From the NCBI GenBank assembly GCA_965113315.1, contig OZ220377.1: DNA of 64,000 nucleotides; one strand, written 5' to 3'. How positions within the stretch are numbered: position 1 is the first letter of the stretch; each line of letters opens with the position of its first letter. A model generated the notes under the pieces. The model had not been told where the DNA came from, searched no databases, and saw only the letters and a list, made by a program, of their open reading frames with translations. A program made the position numbers and the translations under genes. Source of the DNA: Podarcis vaucheri. Its lineage: Eukaryota. Positions 12,770-25,004 of this stretch are shown here, one piece after another.

Positions 12770-13990
12770 AACTAATCTTTCGCGTCACAAAATTTGCCCT
12801 CCCATTGTGCCAAGCGGCGAGGGAGATGGTGACCACACGCATCAGGTGCGAAATGCGTGCAGCAAAATTATATCAGAGAACGTGAGGTAAAACGCGAGGC
12901 AAACCGCGTTTTCTGTGAACGTGTGGTAAAATGACGTGGCTGGCGAAGAAAAACGGTCCCTCGCAGGACGACTCGATAAGGAACTGGGGAGAGAAGTTAT
13001 CAATGTCAAAAAAAGAGCGCCTGCCCCCCCCCCCATTTTTAAAGCCAGAGCCGCTTCTCCTGATGCTTATGGCACAGCGAGGGGTGCTCGGTGCTAAAGC
13101 ACAGTTTGAGAGAGGCGATAACACCTCGCGCAGCCCCACAAACGGGAAGGCAAAAAAGGGGGGGAGGTGGCAGGAAAGCCCCTCAAGTATCGCGCGGGGG
13201 TTGATGGGGATTTTCCCCCTCCCCCCCCCCATTGGCGGGAACGGCCCCCTGAACTGAGAAGTGGCGCGCGCGCGCGGCGGGAGGATAGAGAGCGATGGCG
13301 GGTGGGAGAGGAGATGGCCGTTGGAACATTCGCCCGCGGTTGGCTCCGGTTGCCGCGGCGACGCGCGCCCCCTCCCTCTCCGATGACGCGCGCCGTGACG
13401 CGCGGAGCCTGGGCGGAGCCAAGGGGGAGGAGCCAAGCGCGGCGGCGGCTGGGAGGGCGCCGGGCTTCAGTGGCGGCTGCTCAGTCCTTCGTGAGGGAAA
13501 GAGCGAGAGGGAGAGGCGGAGGGGAAGGAGCGGGGAAGCAGCCCCGGCGGCAGGAGGAGGAGGAGGTGGCGGCGGCGAGGAGGAGCGGGGAGCCGCCCGG
13601 GCAGCATGGTGATGGCCGAGCCCCGGCGGCTTCCCCCTGCTGCTGCCGCGGCGCTGCTCTTGCAGCCGCCCCGCGGAGGGTCGGGCCCCGTCCGCGTCGG
13701 CTTCTACGAGATCGAGGGCACCCTGGGCAAGGGCAACTTCGCCGTGGTCAAGCTGGGCCGGCACCGCATCACGCGGAGCGAGGTGGGGAGAGGCGCCTGA
13801 GAGGAAAAGGGGAGCGCGGTCGTGGCGGGGGGGGGGTGAGAGAGAGAAGGGAGGTGGGCATAGCGAGCCCCCCACCCTCACCTTTCTCTGGCACGGTTGA
13901 GAAGGGGGAGAAGATTTTCCCCCCTGAACAACACGCGTGTTGGGTGAGGATAACGTGTGAACGCGGGCGCCCCATTCTTCTTCCAACCAA
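12770..13990 (+). promoter_or_regulatory. SIK2: SIK2 CpG-island promoter and 5'UTR
   Basis: Abrupt rise in GC and CpG around exon 1; TGACG half-CREs at 13384 and 13396, TGACGTGG at 12932-12939, GGGCGG box near 13411, Inr-like TCAGTCC at 13481-13487; no TATA box seen. Confidence 0.85.
13606..13782 (+). CDS. SIK2: Salt-inducible kinase 2, coding exon 1
   Basis: Strong Kozak AGCATGG; MVMA...[33 protein letters not shown] (Gly-rich loop); donor GAG|gtgggg, phase 0. Confidence 0.96.
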
Positions 13991-14659
13991 GGGGGCGTTT
14001 CTCTATTTTCCCCCTTGGTGGAGGTTATGTTTGAAGGGGATCGAGCTGTGTCCCGCCTTATTTTCTTCCTTCTCTCCAACCACGGGTAGAGGGGGGGGGA
14101 GCATTTCTATCAATCTCCTGCTTTCCCTCTTCCCCACCCCCTTCTCCTTGAGGTGTGCTGATGAAAGAAAGGTAAATGCTCTTTTTTCTCCCCCTTTCTT
14201 TCTGCATCCATGTGTCTTTTCTCCTTGGGAAACTATAATAATGTGGATTCCGGGAAAGGGGAAAGGATTGTGGTGGGTCCTTTTTTGGGGGTGGCCCATA
14301 ATACAAATATTAACAAGAGGAAAGAGGCAGTATTTTTCCTTCCCCCCCCCCCATTCCTTTTTCTAAAAGTACTAAAGTCTTTGGGTGGGTGGGTGCTCTG
14401 GGAGCTTCTTTTCCACTTCATGGCCTTGCCCTTTGGGGTGCCTCAAGGTTGTGTCCTGTTTCTCTGTCATCTTTAACATCTGCAAGAAACCATTGGTGGG
14501 GGAAGTCATCATGAGGTTCAGGCTAAATGTCATTCCTATGCAGATGACACACAGCCTTACCCCTCTTCTCTACCTGCAAGCCCTAGGGGGAGGCTGTCTT
14601 GGAATGGATGCAGGTGGCCTAGTTGAAGCTGAATTAGGATAAAGAGAGAGGCAGTGTGG

Positions 14660-16564: not shown

Positions 16565-16655
16565 CCTGTGTTGGACTACAACTCCCATCATCCCTGAGCT
16601 CTGGCCTTGCTAGCTGGGGTGATGGGAGTTGTAGTTCAACAACATCTGAGCCCCC
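16565..16655. mobile_element. Hairpin MITE fragment (ACTACAACTCCCATC family)
   Basis: Perfect 15-bp inverted repeat ACTACAACTCCCATC (16575-16589) / GATGGGAGTTGTAGT (16621-16635); decayed relatives near 9035-9144, 27281-27401, 29960-30090, 35383-35462, 57015-57110. Confidence 0.75.
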
Positions 16656-17180
16656 AAGAAAGTGTGATTAGAGAGAGAAAGAGAGATGGCAGTCTTCCTT
16701 GTTGTGCAGGGTGGGTTGGAGTATTCTGAAAATGGTTGACACGTCTAAAAGGGACTCTGTCTCAGAAGGACATGGCTGTGCTAATTTTGAGGTGGTTATT
16801 TGCAAATGGGCAGTGGCTTCAATGACTGGAGTTGGGGGAAAGGGTCTAATAAGGCCATTGGGAAGCAGGAACTGGTATTTAGGCATCACATGGTGAACAT
16901 GATTATATTTTCCCTTTATGAAATTTGGGATTGGAAGGGAGGCTGCACCCAAAGAAAAGGCAGTTTTATTATAATTGTAGGCATAAATATGGGGAGGAAG
17001 AAGAGGGGACATAGACGTTTACCTGAGAAGTGAGTTGGGGTGGGTTGTAGCAGAGAAAGGCTGTTGTAATTTAAAACAAGGGGGATTAGTATGTAGGATG
17101 TGGTATGAAAAAATGGCTTTTTAAAAAAGAAGGGAGTTCCTGAGCACAATGAGGTAACAAGGTCAGTCGTGTGCCTAGCA

Positions 17181-17406
17181 CAGTGTTTCCCAACTGGTGT
17201 TCTGCGGCACACTAGTGTGCCGTGAGACACCGGCTGGTGTGCCGTGGGAGGGAGGCGGGCGAGTCGGGCGGCGAGAGGCGGCGGCGGCGAGGATCCGCGT
17301 CGAGCCGGGGGCGGCTCCGCGGTGGTGGTGCCGAGCGGCGGGGCAGCGCGCGCAAAAGGGAGGAGCGCGAGACAGCGGAGGAGGAGGAGGAGGCCGGCAT
17401 GTCCGG

Positions 17407-17438
<32 letters not shown>

Positions 17439-17698
17439 TCCCGGCGACGGCTCCTCCTCCGCCCGCTATCGCCGCCACCACCACAACAGCCGCCGCCGCC
17501 TCAGCTGCCGCCGTCCCTCGCTCTGCTGCCTCCTCCCACCCCGGCAAGGGGAAGGGAAAAAACGTTCACTTTTGTGCGTCCCTCCCGGCGTGACGCTGCG
17601 CGCTGACGTCACGGGGCGGGGCTTTAATGGTGGTGTGCCGCGAGATTATTTTCCGGTAAACAGGTGTGCCGTTGCCCAAAAACGTTTGGGAAACACTG
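17181..17698. mobile_element. hAT (Charlie-like) non-autonomous transposon carrying captured host-gene-like cargo
   Basis: TIR CAGTGTTTCCCAA / TTGGGAAACACTG; perfect 8-bp TSD GCCTAGCA at 17173-17180 and 17699-17706; subterminal GTGTGCCG repeats at 17215, 17237, 17633, 17664. Confidence 0.93.
17399..17593 (+). pseudogene. Captured first-exon-like fragment, 64-aa ORF MSGQ(Q)9LPATAPPPPAIAATTTTAAAA... (donor possibly RANBP9)
   Basis: ATG in GCCGGCATGT context after about 150 nt of GGC/GGA-rich 5'UTR-like sequence; in-frame polyQ/polyP/polyT/polyA with mixed codons; stop TGA 17591-17593. Donor identity is recalled similarity only. Confidence 0.55.
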
Positions 17699-20600
17699 GC
17701 CTAGCAAACTGATCAGAATGATTCCCGGCACTCAGGAAGATTTCCTAGCAGGGTATCTTGTCCCTTTCTCTCAGCTGATTTTGATCTTCAGTGGTATAAC
17801 TGAACTCTGCTATTGTCCTTGTAGCCTCAACCACAGTCATTTCCTTTCCAGTAACTGGGAATGTGATGGGGAAGCGTAACTTCCTTTGTCCCTTTTTTTC
17901 ATTCCAGCAGCAAATGAGGTTAAGAAGCTAGCCCAGGCCTGGCATAATGTTGGCACCTGTCAGTTTTTCTGCAACCAGAAGAATGAATGAGAGTTTATTT
18001 TTCTACTTCTCAGAAGAACTCTCAAGGCAAAACATGCTGGGATACCTTGTCAAACTTTACTGCCTTTGCTCTTAGTCCATTTTTCATGCAGACATCCCTG
18101 GCAGCATGCCCTTGGCTCATTCCATGACTGCATCTTGGAAGTGGGGAGGTGGTACATGCTGCCCATTTAGTTGTCTCAACTCTTCGGTAGTTATACCTTG
18201 GATGAGAATGATAGCAATTCTGGACGCTGGGTTTGCTATTTATCTTTTTGGAAATCACAAAAGTCAAACCTCAGAGTGCTAAGCTCCCATCTATTTTGGA
18301 AAGATCACAAAACTTAGTTCCTTTGACCTGGAGTCAGTTCTATTTTACCTCCCAATCATATGAATCATTCTGTCTGTGTACTAAATTAAGGCCATGAGAA
18401 TCTTTTTGAATGCAAACTACACATTAAAGAAGATGCAAGTCTCAAGGGGGAAAAGCAGAGGGTACACGTAATTACAGTTTATTGGATAAATAGGTAGCTT
18501 GGTTAAGTATTAAATGAATGACTGAAGTAGTTTTTGTGGGATTTTATTAAAGTATCTAAAACATGCTAGATTTTATTTAAGCAACTGAAAAGTTTGTTCC
18601 TAATAGAGGCTAGTACCTTGGCTGGTTTTATGCATCTTTATAGCTGTTTGTGTTCCTAGCATTTTTGCTTATGTTTTCTGAAGGACCCAAACAGTTGAGA
18701 AACTACTTACATTTTTTAAGTAAAGTTGGTGGGAAGGCTAACTTAATTACAGCATTATGTTCTGTAGGTAGAAACAGATGAAAACTAGCGAGTTTTTAAT
18801 GCCTTTAATACATAATGCTTTATTCACTTAATTCATTCACTTTGGGTTGCACTTTCCATATTACATTGTAGTGACTGCTAGGTAATTTTGTACAAATTAT
18901 TCCCTGCTTGATTTTTGACCCATTTTTTTGTCTAGTGTACCAATGTAATGTTGTTAGGGGAGGTTTCAACGTTTGCTGAAAATAATGAAAAATGTTACAT
19001 TGTAAATAACTTTACTTGGAGACTGCAAGATCCATTAATAAAAACACCTCTCTGAGCACTTGCAATTTTTATGTAAATACCTGGCACTATATTTAATATC
19101 TGTCAATAATAAGATTGGATTTGGCAGTAACCTACAGGACATTGCACAGAAAGTGTCAAATACAGCAAGGATGCATGAGTAGCCAGAGATTGATGTATGA
19201 ATGGAAAGAACCAATTTTGGCTTCTGTAGTTGTAGTTGTTGGACACAACAGGGCTCAGAGCGTAAAATGTGCAAAAATAGATGTTTGTAAAGAAGCTTTC
19301 TGTTGCTAAAGGGGATCATAAATTCAAATGGCATTCCTTCATGCTGACAGCCATGCACCTTGTTCAAATTTCAAATAAGAAATTCACCTCTGTTTCTGAT
19401 GTTAAGTCAAGAGATTACAATGTTATGCCATCCTGGTGGTAGTTTTTTGAAATTATTTTCTTCAGCTTTCCTTTTTATAATTCCATACTTTAAAATTCTG
19501 CTAAAATGGAACTTGATCACCTTGTCTCATGACTTTTCTTGACAACCTGATATACACAGGGGTGTCTTATACATGGAAAAGTATGGTAAGCAACTTGAGG
19601 GATTCATGAGCTCTGCTGGTACAGCTGGATTGGTGAGAGAGGATTGTATAAAACCATGCATGGCTCCGCTTTATCTCCCCACTCCCAGTTCTGCTTTCCG
19701 CAATGCAGGAAGCCCCTTTGAGATAATGTTTCTGTTTCAAGTATTTAGTGCATACTGTATTATTATTATTATTAAGAACATAGAAATTGCCTGATAAATC
19801 AGTGTTGGTTTCATCTACCCAGTATCTTGATGGATGGTGGTCACTACTTTAATGTTTTGCAGTGGGTTGCAGTTTTTTCTTCCTATCTGTATGTTACCAT
19901 TTGCAGCTGTCACAGCATCTCTAGAAAGAGGCACATTTTGGTTATGGCACAGAGGTGTGTGGCAATTAGGGTTGCAAAGATACAGAAGCTATATGCTTTG
20001 GTTTGCCTCTACAAGTGAGAGGAACCAAAACAAGAGAAGGAAATAGATTCGGGCAAAACTCCTATGATAATCATGTTGATAAATTTCTGTGAACAAAGAT
20101 TTAGTATGCATATTCAAAAGAAGTATTAACAGTGGTGAATTGTATTTAGATTGGGTAGACTAGACTGCTATGGTTCAAGCATGTGGTACTGTGTTTCTCA
20201 TAACTGGCATAAGTTTTGCTTCCTAACTTTTGCTGCTTTATTAAGGCTGAAAAATTATTATATTCAAGGATATCTTAAAATCATTCTCAAAAGAAATCAG
20301 AAGCGGACCAAAACACTATGAACTTTTGAAATGTAGCATTAACAATCCACAACTACAGTGTTGGTGACAAAGTGTTCTGTAAAAAAAATTTGACAGTGAA
20401 GACTAGAACTACAACAGAATGTATGCAGTTTTCCCCTCCCTTCTCATGTTTCAGAATTAGAGGAAATAAGTGAAAGTTAGGGAAGTAACTTGGTTGACTT
20501 ACTGAAAACTAATTTTCTTGGAACTGTATAGCTTACAGACCTTCAAATTTATTTCATCATTGTTTGGAAAGGTTATATTACTAGCAGATATCCATAGCAT

Positions 20601-24866: not shown

Positions 24867-25004
<138 letters not shown>

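What the first reader, a model, noticed from the sequence alone, without database searches (positions are those of the whole stretch)
17181..17698. Candidate Pack-hAT: a DNA transposon carrying a host gene's 5'UTR and start-codon region into SIK2 intron 1
Seen: a cleanly delimited 518-bp hAT (13-bp TIRs, perfect TSD GCCTAGCA). Its transposon-like arms are only about 65 bp each, with GTGTGCCG repeats and the 18-bp palindrome CGGCACACTAGTGTGCCG. The roughly 380-bp interior is very GC/CpG-rich, reads like a 5'UTR (GGC and GGA runs), then has an ATG at 17399 opening MSGQQQQQQQQQQLPATAPPPPAIAATTTTAAAASAAAVPRSAASSHPGKGK. Known: gene-fragment capture by TIR elements (Pack-MULE/Pack-TIR) is well described in plants, favours GC-rich 5' gene ends, and is much less documented in amniotes. 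Inference: this is a captured first exon, and intact CpGs imply a young insertion. If multi-copy, it is a mobile CpG-island/polyQ-ORF cassette in a lizard genome.
Basis: partly seen in the sequence, partly recalled or inferred. Interest (0 to 1): 0.88.

Follow-up and report, generated by a model that had tools for sequence, protein, structure and literature searches.

The report
Gene-fragment-carrying hAT transposon in SIK2 intron
A small cut-and-paste (hAT) transposon sits in the first intron of a SIK-family kinase gene in a lizard. Its ends are genuine transposon ends and its middle is CpG-island DNA of host-gene type. It is an animal example of a gene-fragment-carrying ("Pack") transposon, but the donor gene and the copy number could not be checked here.

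Summary
Positions 17181-17698 are bounded by a perfect 13-nt terminal inverted repeat and an identical 8-nt target duplication, GCCTAGCA. This is the only such configuration in the window, and none arose in 100 shuffles.

Both ~67-nt arms share their architecture with hAT MITEs found in 64 metagenome contigs. They also carry the CAGTGRTTCCCAA-type end of the Anolis hAT-HT3 family.

The interior has GC 0.69-0.76 and CpG o/e 1.0, against 0.13-0.31 in the flanks. It is not one piece:
- **Block B (17488-17630).** Two Podarcis muralis gene models also end in its peptide, but there it follows PPAT residues 1-42. B is therefore family-shared sequence.
- **Block A (17248-17487).** Only this block can be copy- or subfamily-specific cargo. 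It has 151 nt of leader-like sequence, an ATG and 30 codons.

The RANBP9 origin of A rests on memory and one paper's description. Every sequence search was blank.

Untested first-reader notes from this scan list at least five more RANBP9-like copies on other pieces of this genome. They also list many other cargos.

Verdict: a Pack-type non-autonomous hAT, probably one copy of an amplified subfamily.

The parts
17173..17180 (.). Left copy of the 8-bp target-site duplication GCCTAGCA.
   Evidence: It directly abuts the left TIR. The central CTAG fits the nTCTAGAn / NYYTARRN target consensus listed for Anolis hAT families.
17181..17193 (+). Left terminal inverted repeat CAGTGTTTCCCAA.
   Evidence: It is a perfect complement of 17686-17698. 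It differs at one position from the first 13 nt of the Anolis hAT-HT3_AC TIR CAGTGRTTCCCAAA.
17181..17247 (+). Left arm: TIR, then a palindromic pair of the subterminal motif (CGGCACAC / GTGTGCCG, 17205-17222), then a third GTGTGCCG at 17237-17244.
   Evidence: The layout of palindromic motif pair, roughly 12-nt spacer and third motif is the same as in the metagenome MITE consensus. After shuffling everything beyond the TIR, 15 of 500 shuffles reach the alignment score.
17248..17398 (+). Block A, upstream part: 151 nt of GGC/GGA-rich, CpG-rich sequence that reads like a 5'UTR or core promoter, with a GC box near 17308-17315.
   Evidence: block A as a whole: GC 0.76, CpG o/e 1.02. There is no match elsewhere in the window beyond short simple repeats. 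The assignment as a leader is inference.
17399..17487 (+). Block A, coding-like part: ATG plus about 30 codons (MSGQ, ten Q, LPATAPPPPAIAATTTT). This is the candidate captured start-codon region, RANBP9-like.
   Evidence: The RANBP9 resemblance comes from memory plus the description of the RanBPM 1-25 poly-P/Q motif in PMC4319831. No sequence search confirmed it.
17488..17630 (+). Block B: a CpG-rich module shared with relatives that carry a different cargo. It encodes ORF codons 31-64 with the stop at 17591-17593, and holds a half-CRE at 17591-17595, a full CRE TGACGTCA at 17604-11, a GC box GGGGCGGGGC at 17613-22 and a TTTAAT at 17623-28.
   Evidence: P0002 and P0004 (Podarcis muralis) match 17510-17590 by tblastn with 25 of 27 residues identical, E 5e-14. 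The P0004 string SRRRLSCRRPS equals the +1 frame of 17488-17520. The left limit is at or before 17488. The stretch 17591-17630 is assigned to B by position only, because the protein evidence ends at the stop codon.
17631..17698 (+). Right arm: GTGTGCCG motifs at 17633-40 and 17664-71, then the terminal 22 nt and the TIR (17686-17698).
   Evidence: The last 22 nt are identical to the ends of MITE-like elements in 64 metagenome contigs. The whole arm aligns to their consensus, and only 2 of 500 shuffles reach the score.
17699..17706 (.). Right copy of the target-site duplication GCCTAGCA.
13606..13785 (+). Host gene exon 1 (MVMAEPRR...[20 protein letters not shown]) within the gene's own CpG island at about 13000-14000.
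   Evidence: The assignment to SIK2 rather than SIK1 or SIK3 is from my memory of the human sequences.
24870..24986 (+). Host gene exon 2 ([39 protein letters not shown]). It places the element in intron 1.
   Evidence: The best solved-structure match is SIK3, E 5e-15, followed by the MARK kinases.

Best explanation
This is a 518-bp non-autonomous hAT transposon inserted, in sense orientation, into intron 1 of a SIK-family (SIK2-like) kinase gene.

Mobility. A hAT transposase supplied in trans would recognise the 13-nt TIRs and the GTGTGCCG subterminal repeats. Integration made the 8-bp duplication.

Structure. Between two ~67-nt arms that are true hAT ends lies foreign, CpG-island-like DNA in two blocks:
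- Block B (17488-17630) is a CRE/GC-box module common to the family. In Podarcis muralis it follows PPAT exon 1 instead.
- Block A (17248-17487) is the part specific to this copy or its subfamily. It reads as the leader, start codon and first 30 codons of a gene with a poly-Q/poly-P N-terminus, most plausibly RANBP9.

Origin. The element is therefore a Pack-type hAT. The foreign DNA was most likely copied in by template switching during repair synthesis, either after an excision or at a stalled fork. The composite was then mobilised as a unit. This copy is probably one of several in the genome rather than the site of the capture.

Shown: the ends, the duplication, the arm homology, block B adjoining a different gene fragment elsewhere, and the intron position.
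Inferred: the donor identity, the capture mechanism, the multicopy status, and any promoter or splice activity.
For: - TIR and duplication are exact and unique in the window; 0 of 100 shuffles gave such a configuration.
- The TIR belongs to the CAGTGRTTCCCAA clade of the Anolis hAT-HT3 / hAT-N3 families, and the target has the same central CTAG.
- The terminal 22-mer is identical in 64 metagenome contigs. There it ends 0.4-1.5-kb elements; for 23 of them a left end and 8-bp flanks matching within two mismatches were found. Both arms share those elements' motif layout.
- The interior is unlike those elements' AT-rich interiors. It has CpG o/e 1.0, against 0.13-0.31 in the flanks.
- P0002 and P0004 consist of PPAT residues 1-42 plus the block-B-encoded tail. 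The PPAT part matches PDB 9q0n at E 1e-14 with identity stopping after LQH. The tail matches at 25 of 27 residues, E 5e-14. Two different gene 5' ends therefore adjoin the same block.
- P0002 and P0004 differ by substitutions and a 15-nt indel, so at least two PPAT-bearing loci exist.
- Nothing in the 64-kb window could have served as a local template.
- Untested leads: first-reader notes list five more RANBP9-like or polyQ/polyP-plus-CRE hAT copies of 507-682 bp, and other cargos, on other pieces of this genome.
Against: - No TIR-less donor was found, and no search linked block A to RANBP9 or to any other gene. These searches are nearly blind to a 30-residue low-complexity match and to proteins outside the allowed length range.
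- It is not shown that the Podarcis PPAT models are flanked by the same TIRs.
- If those models are spliced, block A could also be family-shared. Both junctions follow an AG in the window sequence, so splicing is plausible.
- The autonomous partner is unknown, so a native origin of A or B cannot be excluded.
- Copy number rests only on unchecked notes.
Confidence: 0.6

Rival explanations
1. Internal-deletion derivative. Blocks A and/or B would be native parts of the still unseen autonomous element, namely its promoter, leader and first transposase codons, or its 3' region. In that case nothing was captured in this subfamily and the MSGQ/poly-Q ORF is the remnant of the transposase start.
For: Non-autonomous hAT elements commonly keep both ends plus short native internal pieces (general knowledge; Novick 2010). 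Block B is family-shared. The notes suggest the A+B interior recurs in several copies, as a family consensus would. No donor was found.
Against: The interior has 69-76% GC with CpG o/e 1.0, which is unlike the AT-rich interiors of the related metagenome elements. The family does carry real host gene 5' ends: the PPAT part matches PDB 9q0n at E 1e-14. CRE and GC-box motifs lying downstream of the ORF do not fit a simple layout of 5' end followed by 3' end of one gene.
Confidence: 0.17
2. Host-derived cargo, but the ORF is accidental. Block A would come from another CpG island, or would be carried in antisense with block B acting as promoter on the minus strand and the CAG run read as a CTG-rich leader. 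The RANBP9 likeness would be a coincidence of low-complexity sequence.
For: All protein searches for the first 30-40 codons were blank. Every frame on both strands is open across the interior, as expected for GC-rich non-coding DNA. CRE and GC-box motifs act in either orientation.
Against: [quoted passage not shown] Several first readers independently gave the same reading on other copies (unchecked). The ATG has a G at position -3.
Confidence: 0.15
3. Filling in place. A plain ~280-bp MITE inserted here first. The foreign DNA was then copied into it at this locus during repair of a break, without transposition. This is the main route proposed for single-copy Pack-TIRs in animals.
For: Tan et al. 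2021 infer this gap-filling route for most animal Pack-TIRs. A perfect target duplication does not say when the interior arrived.
Against: No template exists within the 64 kb around the site, whereas in that paper's model spatial proximity favours the template switch. Block B in the same position relative to another cargo in Podarcis implies that composites move or are inherited as units. The notes report sister copies with the same interior elsewhere (unchecked).
Confidence: 0.05

Closest known systems
Pack-TIR / Pack-hAT elements of animals (Tan et al. 2021, Nat Commun, PMC8277862), for example Pack-hAT-N8_XT carrying the CAPSL 5'UTR in Xenopus tropicalis
   Same: It is a TIR transposon whose interior is replaced by a short host fragment; the median there is 224 bp and block A here is about 240 bp. 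hAT is the commonest carrier (208 of 370). The multicopy cases there favour GC-rich sources, and one carries a 5'UTR.
   Different: Most elements in that survey are single-copy and are explained by filling in place; only 4 multicopy cases were found in 100 genomes. The only lizard in that survey (anoCar2) had 0 Pack-TIRs and only 77 annotated TIR-TE copies (none of them hAT), so squamates were effectively unsampled. Here the interior is composite, with a family-shared promoter-like block plus variable cargo. According to unchecked notes, the family carries many different first exons.
Pack-MULEs of rice and other plants
   Same: Both show recurrent capture of GC-rich 5' gene ends by one transposon lineage, amplification of the composites, and transcription as chimeric RNAs (general knowledge).
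   Different: The superfamily differs: Mutator has 9-bp duplications and long TIRs, whereas this is hAT with an 8-bp duplication and a 13-nt TIR. The host is an animal with CpG methylation, so the cargo stands out as a CpG island.
Anolis carolinensis hAT-HT3_AC, hAT-HT3N1/N3_AC and hAT-N3_AC (Novick et al. 2010, PMC3014272)
   Same: The TIRs are CAGTGRTTCCCAAA and CAGTGGTTCCCAACCT, against CAGTGTTTCCCAAC here. Both have an 8-bp duplication with central CTAG, and both are short non-autonomous derivatives of a few hundred bp.
   Different: The TIR differs at one position and the subterminal motifs could not be compared. That paper reports 'extraneous DNA' mainly in hobo elements, as fragments of other transposons, and not as gene first exons.
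MITE-like hAT elements in JGI metagenome contigs (loci L001-L064)
   Same: The terminal 22 nt are identical. The arm architecture is the same: TIR, palindromic motif pair and third motif on the left, and two motifs on the right. They have 8-bp flanking repeats around nTCTAGAn.
   Different: The subterminal motif there is GGATCCG(T/C)G rather than GTGTGCCG. Their interiors are AT-rich and carry no CpG-island block. The source organism is not given by the tool; the sequence looks like insect host DNA, which is my guess.

Membership tests
hAT superfamily, non-autonomous element | 8-bp target-site duplication flanking the element | tested here: met
   GCCTAGCA lies at 17173-80 and 17699-706, abutting the TIRs. 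No such configuration arose in 100 shuffles.
hAT superfamily, non-autonomous element | Short TIRs (about 10-25 nt) of the CAG...CTG type, resembling TIRs of recognised hAT families | tested here: met
   The TIR is a 13-nt perfect repeat, CAGTGTTTCCCAA. It has one mismatch to the first 13 nt of hAT-HT3_AC CAGTGRTTCCCAAA in Table 1 of PMC3014272.
hAT superfamily, non-autonomous element | Subterminal short repeats on both arms (presumed transposase-binding sites) | tested here: met
   There are five copies of GTGTGCCG/CGGCACAC confined to the two arms. The layout is conserved in the metagenome relatives. Binding itself was not tested.
hAT superfamily, non-autonomous element | An autonomous partner with the same ends that encodes a hAT transposase (BED finger plus hAT dimerisation domain) | not testable with these tools
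   No lizard genome DNA beyond the window was reachable, and there is no such ORF in the window.
Pack-TIR (sense of Tan et al. 2021) | Internal sequence that is not transposon sequence | tested here: inconclusive
   The interior is CpG-island-like and unlike the interiors of the related MITEs. Relatives carry a bona fide PPAT exon-1 fragment. No consensus of the lizard family or of its autonomous element was available.
Pack-TIR (sense of Tan et al. 2021) | A parental, TIR-less copy of the internal sequence elsewhere in the same genome | not testable with these tools
There is no local parent in the window.
Pack-TIR (sense of Tan et al. 2021) | For a transposition-dependent (multicopy) Pack element: several copies with the same cargo and different duplications | not tested
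   Only unchecked first-reader notes report further RANBP9-like copies. The window holds a single copy.
RANBP9 (RanBPM) 5' end as donor of block A | Significant sequence match of the cargo to RANBP9 exon 1 or its leader | tested here: inconclusive
   No hit came from PDB, from 1.84 billion representative proteins, from the word-indexed protein searches or from the ESM Atlas. The region is low-complexity and only 30 codons long, and length windows excluded full-length proteins.
RANBP9 (RanBPM) 5' end as donor of block A | Extreme N-terminus with a glutamine run flanked by proline stretches | tested here: met
   The ORF begins MSGQ, then ten Q, then LPATAPPPPA. [quoted passage not shown] This is a compositional likeness, not proof of origin.

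The most novel reading that the evidence does not exclude
One lizard hAT lineage behaves like an animal counterpart of rice Pack-MULEs. It would repeatedly pick up CpG-island promoters and first exons, sometimes with their splice donors (PPAT shown here; RANBP9-like, POLR2H, PKD2, CDK5R2 and others per unchecked notes). It would place them next to a fixed CRE/GC-box block and amplify the composites. This would scatter portable unmethylated promoters and first exons through introns, and these would be transcribed and spliced into chimeric RNAs that annotation pipelines already call genes in Podarcis muralis.
Probability: 0.35. Interest if true: 0.8.

Novelty: new member of a known kind. Interest (0 to 1): 0.55.

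Why it matters
Capture and spread of gene fragments by cut-and-paste transposons is well documented in plants. In animals it is known mostly as rare, single-copy, old events, and the one broad animal survey effectively had no squamate data.

A young-looking, probably multicopy hAT family that moves CpG-island 5' gene ends in a lizard would offer a live amniote system for three questions: how such capture happens, whether transposed CpG islands stay unmethylated, and how often they create new promoters, first exons or chimeric transcripts inside host genes. Here the insertion lies 3.4 kb downstream of the SIK2-like promoter, in sense orientation.

There is also a practical point. Short 'genes' such as UniProt A0A670KLX4 and A0A670HW21 are probably transposon-borne exon-1 copies rather than true paralogues.

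Tried and rejected

**Donor searches, all blank**
- PDB with the 64-aa ORF and with its first 35 aa.
- phmmer of the ORF against 1.84 billion representatives. Apart from P0002, it returned only two huge repetitive proteins, P0001 and P0003, which I regard as compositional noise.
- The search for homologous proteins with the 123-aa in-frame ORF (P0002 only), with the 171-aa frame that spans both arms (nothing), and with residues 60-99 alone at E up to 10 (nothing).
- ESM Atlas and NCBIfam on P0002 and P0004.
- Literal peptide strings in the paper library.
- These blanks say little. The match sought is 30 low-complexity residues, and the word-indexed protein searches consider only proteins of similar length to the query.

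**DNA pattern scans**
- Lizard-specific arm and block-B patterns found nothing in bacterial/archaeal genome contigs or in viral contigs.

**Other checks**
- Rfam found nothing in the element except a chance sub-threshold sRNA hit.
- A local origin of the cargo from the SIK2 CpG island is rejected: only 12-19-nt simple-repeat matches were found.
- A chance origin of the TIR plus duplication is rejected.
They were searched singly by reference.

Full report
**1. The observation**

- CAGTGTTTCCCAA at 17181-17193 and its reverse complement at 17686-17698 are the only perfect matches in the 64-kb window.
- GCCTAGCA directly flanks both ends.
- A scan of the whole window for 13-nt perfect inverted pairs within 5 kb flanked by identical 8-mers returns this one element. 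The same scan on 100 dinucleotide-preserving shuffles returns none.
- The 18-nt palindrome at 17205-17222, the GTGTGCCG repeats and the ATG at 17399 are as described. GGTGTGCCG has three matches, all inside the element, against 0.13 expected.
- The ORF runs 64 codons to a TGA at 17591-17593.
- The element has GC 0.68 and CpG o/e 1.00. The flanking intron has o/e 0.13-0.32.

**2. Host context**

On the + strand, exon 1 of a SIK-family kinase lies at about 13606-13785, inside that gene's own CpG island (MVMAEPRR...[20 protein letters not shown]). Exon 2 lies at 24870-24986 (AIKIIDK...[10 protein letters not shown]). Later kinase exons lie near 56.1 and 63.4 kb.

Exon 2 alone matches SIK3 best among solved structures (E 5e-15), followed by the MARK kinases. 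My call of SIK2 rests on memory of the human paralogues. The exons were searched singly by reference, and I did not build or search a joined model.

The insertion is therefore in intron 1, in sense orientation, 3.4 kb downstream of exon 1.

**3. The arms are genuine hAT ends**

Table 1 of Novick et al. 2010 lists the Anolis hAT-HT3_AC TIR as CAGTGRTTCCCAAA and the hAT-N3_AC TIR as CAGTGGTTCCCAACCT, with 8-bp targets NTCTAGAN / NYYTARRN. The TIR here differs at one position, and the target shares the central CTAG.

A scan of JGI metagenome contigs with the terminal 22-mer gave 64 loci.
- In these loci the 22-mer ends an element and is followed by flanks such as CTCTAG.., CTATAGAG and GTCTAGAG.
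- In 23 cases a left end of the CAGTGGTTCCCAA type lies 0.4-1.5 kb upstream, preceded by an 8-mer that matches the right-hand flank within two mismatches.
- Their consensus left arm has a palindromic pair of a subterminal motif, a roughly 12-nt spacer and a third motif copy. The window's left arm has the same layout, with GTGTGCCG in place of GGATCCG.
- The right arms also align over about 65 nt.
- With the TIR held fixed and the rest shuffled, 15 of 500 shuffles (left) and 2 of 500 (right) reach the observed score.
- Beyond about 67 nt the two families share nothing. The metagenome elements are AT-rich inside and this one is CpG-rich.

**4. The interior is composite**

A phmmer search of the 64-aa ORF against 1.84 billion representative proteins found one meaningful hit, P0002 (74 aa), matching ORF residues 36-64.

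P0002 and its cluster mate P0004 (79 aa) are UniRef entries A0A670KLX4 and A0A670HW21 from Podarcis muralis. Both are named 'Glutamine amidotransferase type-2 domain-containing protein'.
- Their first 42 residues are the N-terminus of amidophosphoribosyltransferase (PPAT). Residues 12-42 align to PDB 9q0n at E 1e-14, and identity stops right after ...GLVGLQH.
- The rest is encoded by this element. tblastn places P0002 residues 48-74 on 17510-17590 with 25 of 27 identical, E 5e-14.
- The P0004 string SRRRLSCRRPS is the +1-frame reading of 17488-17520.
- The frame change between the two stretches is explained by one extra copy of an 8-nt unit (GTCCCTCG) in the Podarcis copies. This is my inference from the codons.

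Sequence from 17488 onward therefore sits next to a PPAT exon-1 fragment in Podarcis and next to the MSGQ/poly-Q fragment here. That makes 17488-17630 a shared block (B). It includes ORF codons 31-64, the half-CRE, the full CRE at 17604-11, the GC box at 17613-22 and a TTTAAT. It is not cargo specific to this copy. The protein evidence itself ends at the stop codon (17591-17593); the rest of B, up to the right arm, is assigned by position.

This agrees with, and sharpens, the sibling note that the promoter module downstream of the ORF suggests chimeric cargo (s1-849687).

**5. A caveat on the left limit of B**

Both Podarcis junctions follow an AG in the window sequence (...ACAG|CC at 17489/17490 and ...CTCAG|CT at 17504/17505). 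PPAT identity also ends at ...CAC AG, which is a typical exon end.

The models may therefore be spliced from the captured PPAT donor into block B, rather than being contiguous DNA. The 15-nt difference between P0002 and P0004 can equally be a slippage deletion between CAGC repeats.

If the models are spliced, B could extend further left than 17488, and block A might also be present in those loci. This cannot be settled without the DNA.

**6. Block A (17248-17487)**

It contains 151 nt of GGC/GGA-rich sequence, an ATG with G at -3, and 30 codons: MSGQ, ten Q, LPATAPPPPAIAATTTT.

A sibling note proposed RANBP9 (s1-849635). From memory, human RANBP9 begins MSGQ, then a proline run, a glutamine run, L, S and a second proline run. 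[quoted passage not shown]

That is a good compositional and positional likeness, but I could not turn it into a test. Searches of PDB, the representative library, three word-indexed searches and the ESM Atlas were all blank. These methods cannot be expected to see a 30-residue low-complexity match, and the word-indexed protein searches consider only proteins of similar length to the query.

Nothing elsewhere in the window resembles A or B beyond 12-19-nt simple repeats, so there is no local template.

**7. Family picture from this scan's own notes (unchecked leads)**

On other pieces of the same genome, first readers listed:
- four hAT elements of 507-682 bp with a RANBP9-like first exon, one of them 'plus a CRE/GC-box promoter piece';
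- a fifth element with an 'ATG-polyQ/polyP ORF and a CRE' in a MUTYH intron;
- hAT elements said to carry POLR2H, PKD2, CDK5R2 and other promoter or first-exon fragments;
- one note of 'identical transposon ends carrying different cargo'.

I could not read those sequences. If the notes are right, the A+B interior defines an amplified subfamily. The capture would then have happened once in its ancestor, and this locus would be simply one insertion. That changed my reading from 'a capture event seen here' to 'one copy of a mobile composite'.

**8. Mechanism**

Shown: a composite flanked by exact hAT ends and an exact 8-bp duplication, and the same internal block adjoining two different gene 5' ends in two lizard genomes or lineages.

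Inferred:
- Mobilisation in trans by a hAT transposase that recognises the TIRs and the GTGTGCCG repeats.
- Acquisition of the foreign DNA by template switching during repair synthesis after excision, or at a stalled fork. These are the gap-filling and FoSTeST models discussed by Tan et al. 2021.
- Open, GC-rich promoter regions as preferred templates.
- The intact CpGs mean either a recent insertion or a CpG island that stays unmethylated in the germ line.

On the + strand, block B reads CRE, GC box, TTTAAT. This is the usual order of a core promoter pointing out through the right arm, towards SIK2 exon 2, and a CAG|GTGTGC donor-like site lies at 17661/17662. This is speculation and is not part of the claim.

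**9. Comparison with known systems and novelty**

Pack-TIRs in animals are established: 370 in 100 genomes, of which 208 are on hAT elements. Their median cargo is 224 bp. Only four multicopy cases were reported, one of which carries a 5'UTR. This element fits that kind.

What is less ordinary:
- The lineage. The survey's only lizard had essentially no annotated TIR elements and 0 Pack-TIRs.
- The composite interior with a fixed promoter-like block.
- The hint of many different first-exon cargos on one set of ends.

Full-text searches found no description of such a family in lacertids or other squamates. The library is incomplete, however.

**10. Verdict**

It is a real hAT insertion and very probably a Pack-type element. 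Donor, copy number and age remain open.

I file it as a new member of a known kind, of moderate interest. A family-level reading would deserve more interest if a genome-wide BLAST confirms it.

Noticed in passing
L001-L064 (JGI metagenome contigs), e.g. L035:3643-4083, L059:1047-1493: These contigs hold a family of 0.4-1.5-kb MITE-like hAT elements. The ends are CAGTGGTTCCCAA... and ...CAAAAACGTTTGGGAAACACTG, with GGATCCG subterminal motifs and 8-bp flanking repeats around nTCTAGAn. The contigs are AT-rich and look like eukaryotic (insect?) host DNA. The shared 22-nt terminus and arm layout with a lizard element hint at an old common lineage or at horizontal transfer, as proposed for the Anolis hAT-HT families.
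   Followed up: partly
P0002 / P0004 (UniRef A0A670KLX4, A0A670HW21, Podarcis muralis): These two annotated 74- and 79-aa 'genes' consist of PPAT residues 1-42 joined to a peptide encoded by the transposon's block B. They are probably transcribed transposon-borne exon-1 copies rather than PPAT paralogues. Both junctions follow an AG in the homologous window sequence, so the models may be spliced.
   Followed up: partly
window 16567-16644: A near-perfect hairpin with a stem of about 30 bp (GGACTACAACTCCCATCATCCC... and its complement). Folded as DNA it gives -29.3 kcal/mol, z -7.9. It has sub-threshold hits to the mir-769 and mir-5408 models on both strands. It is most likely a small inverted-repeat transposon, not a microRNA gene.
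   Followed up: partly
window 16600-17200: There is a strong G-over-C skew (up to +0.57) in the roughly 600 bp just left of the insertion site. The cause was not examined.
   Followed up: no
window 17246-17256 and 17576-17586: An 11-nt inverted match (GGGAGGGAGGC / GCGTCCCTCCC, one mismatch) joins the first bases after the left arm to the middle of block B (I22). It could be a trace of longer subterminal symmetry in the backbone, or chance in GC-rich DNA.
   Followed up: no
P0001, P0003: The other two hits of the representative search are 2022- and 1622-aa proteins built of long tandem repeats. They match the ORF in 23 and 11 stretches. I read this as compositional noise, not homology.
   Followed up: no
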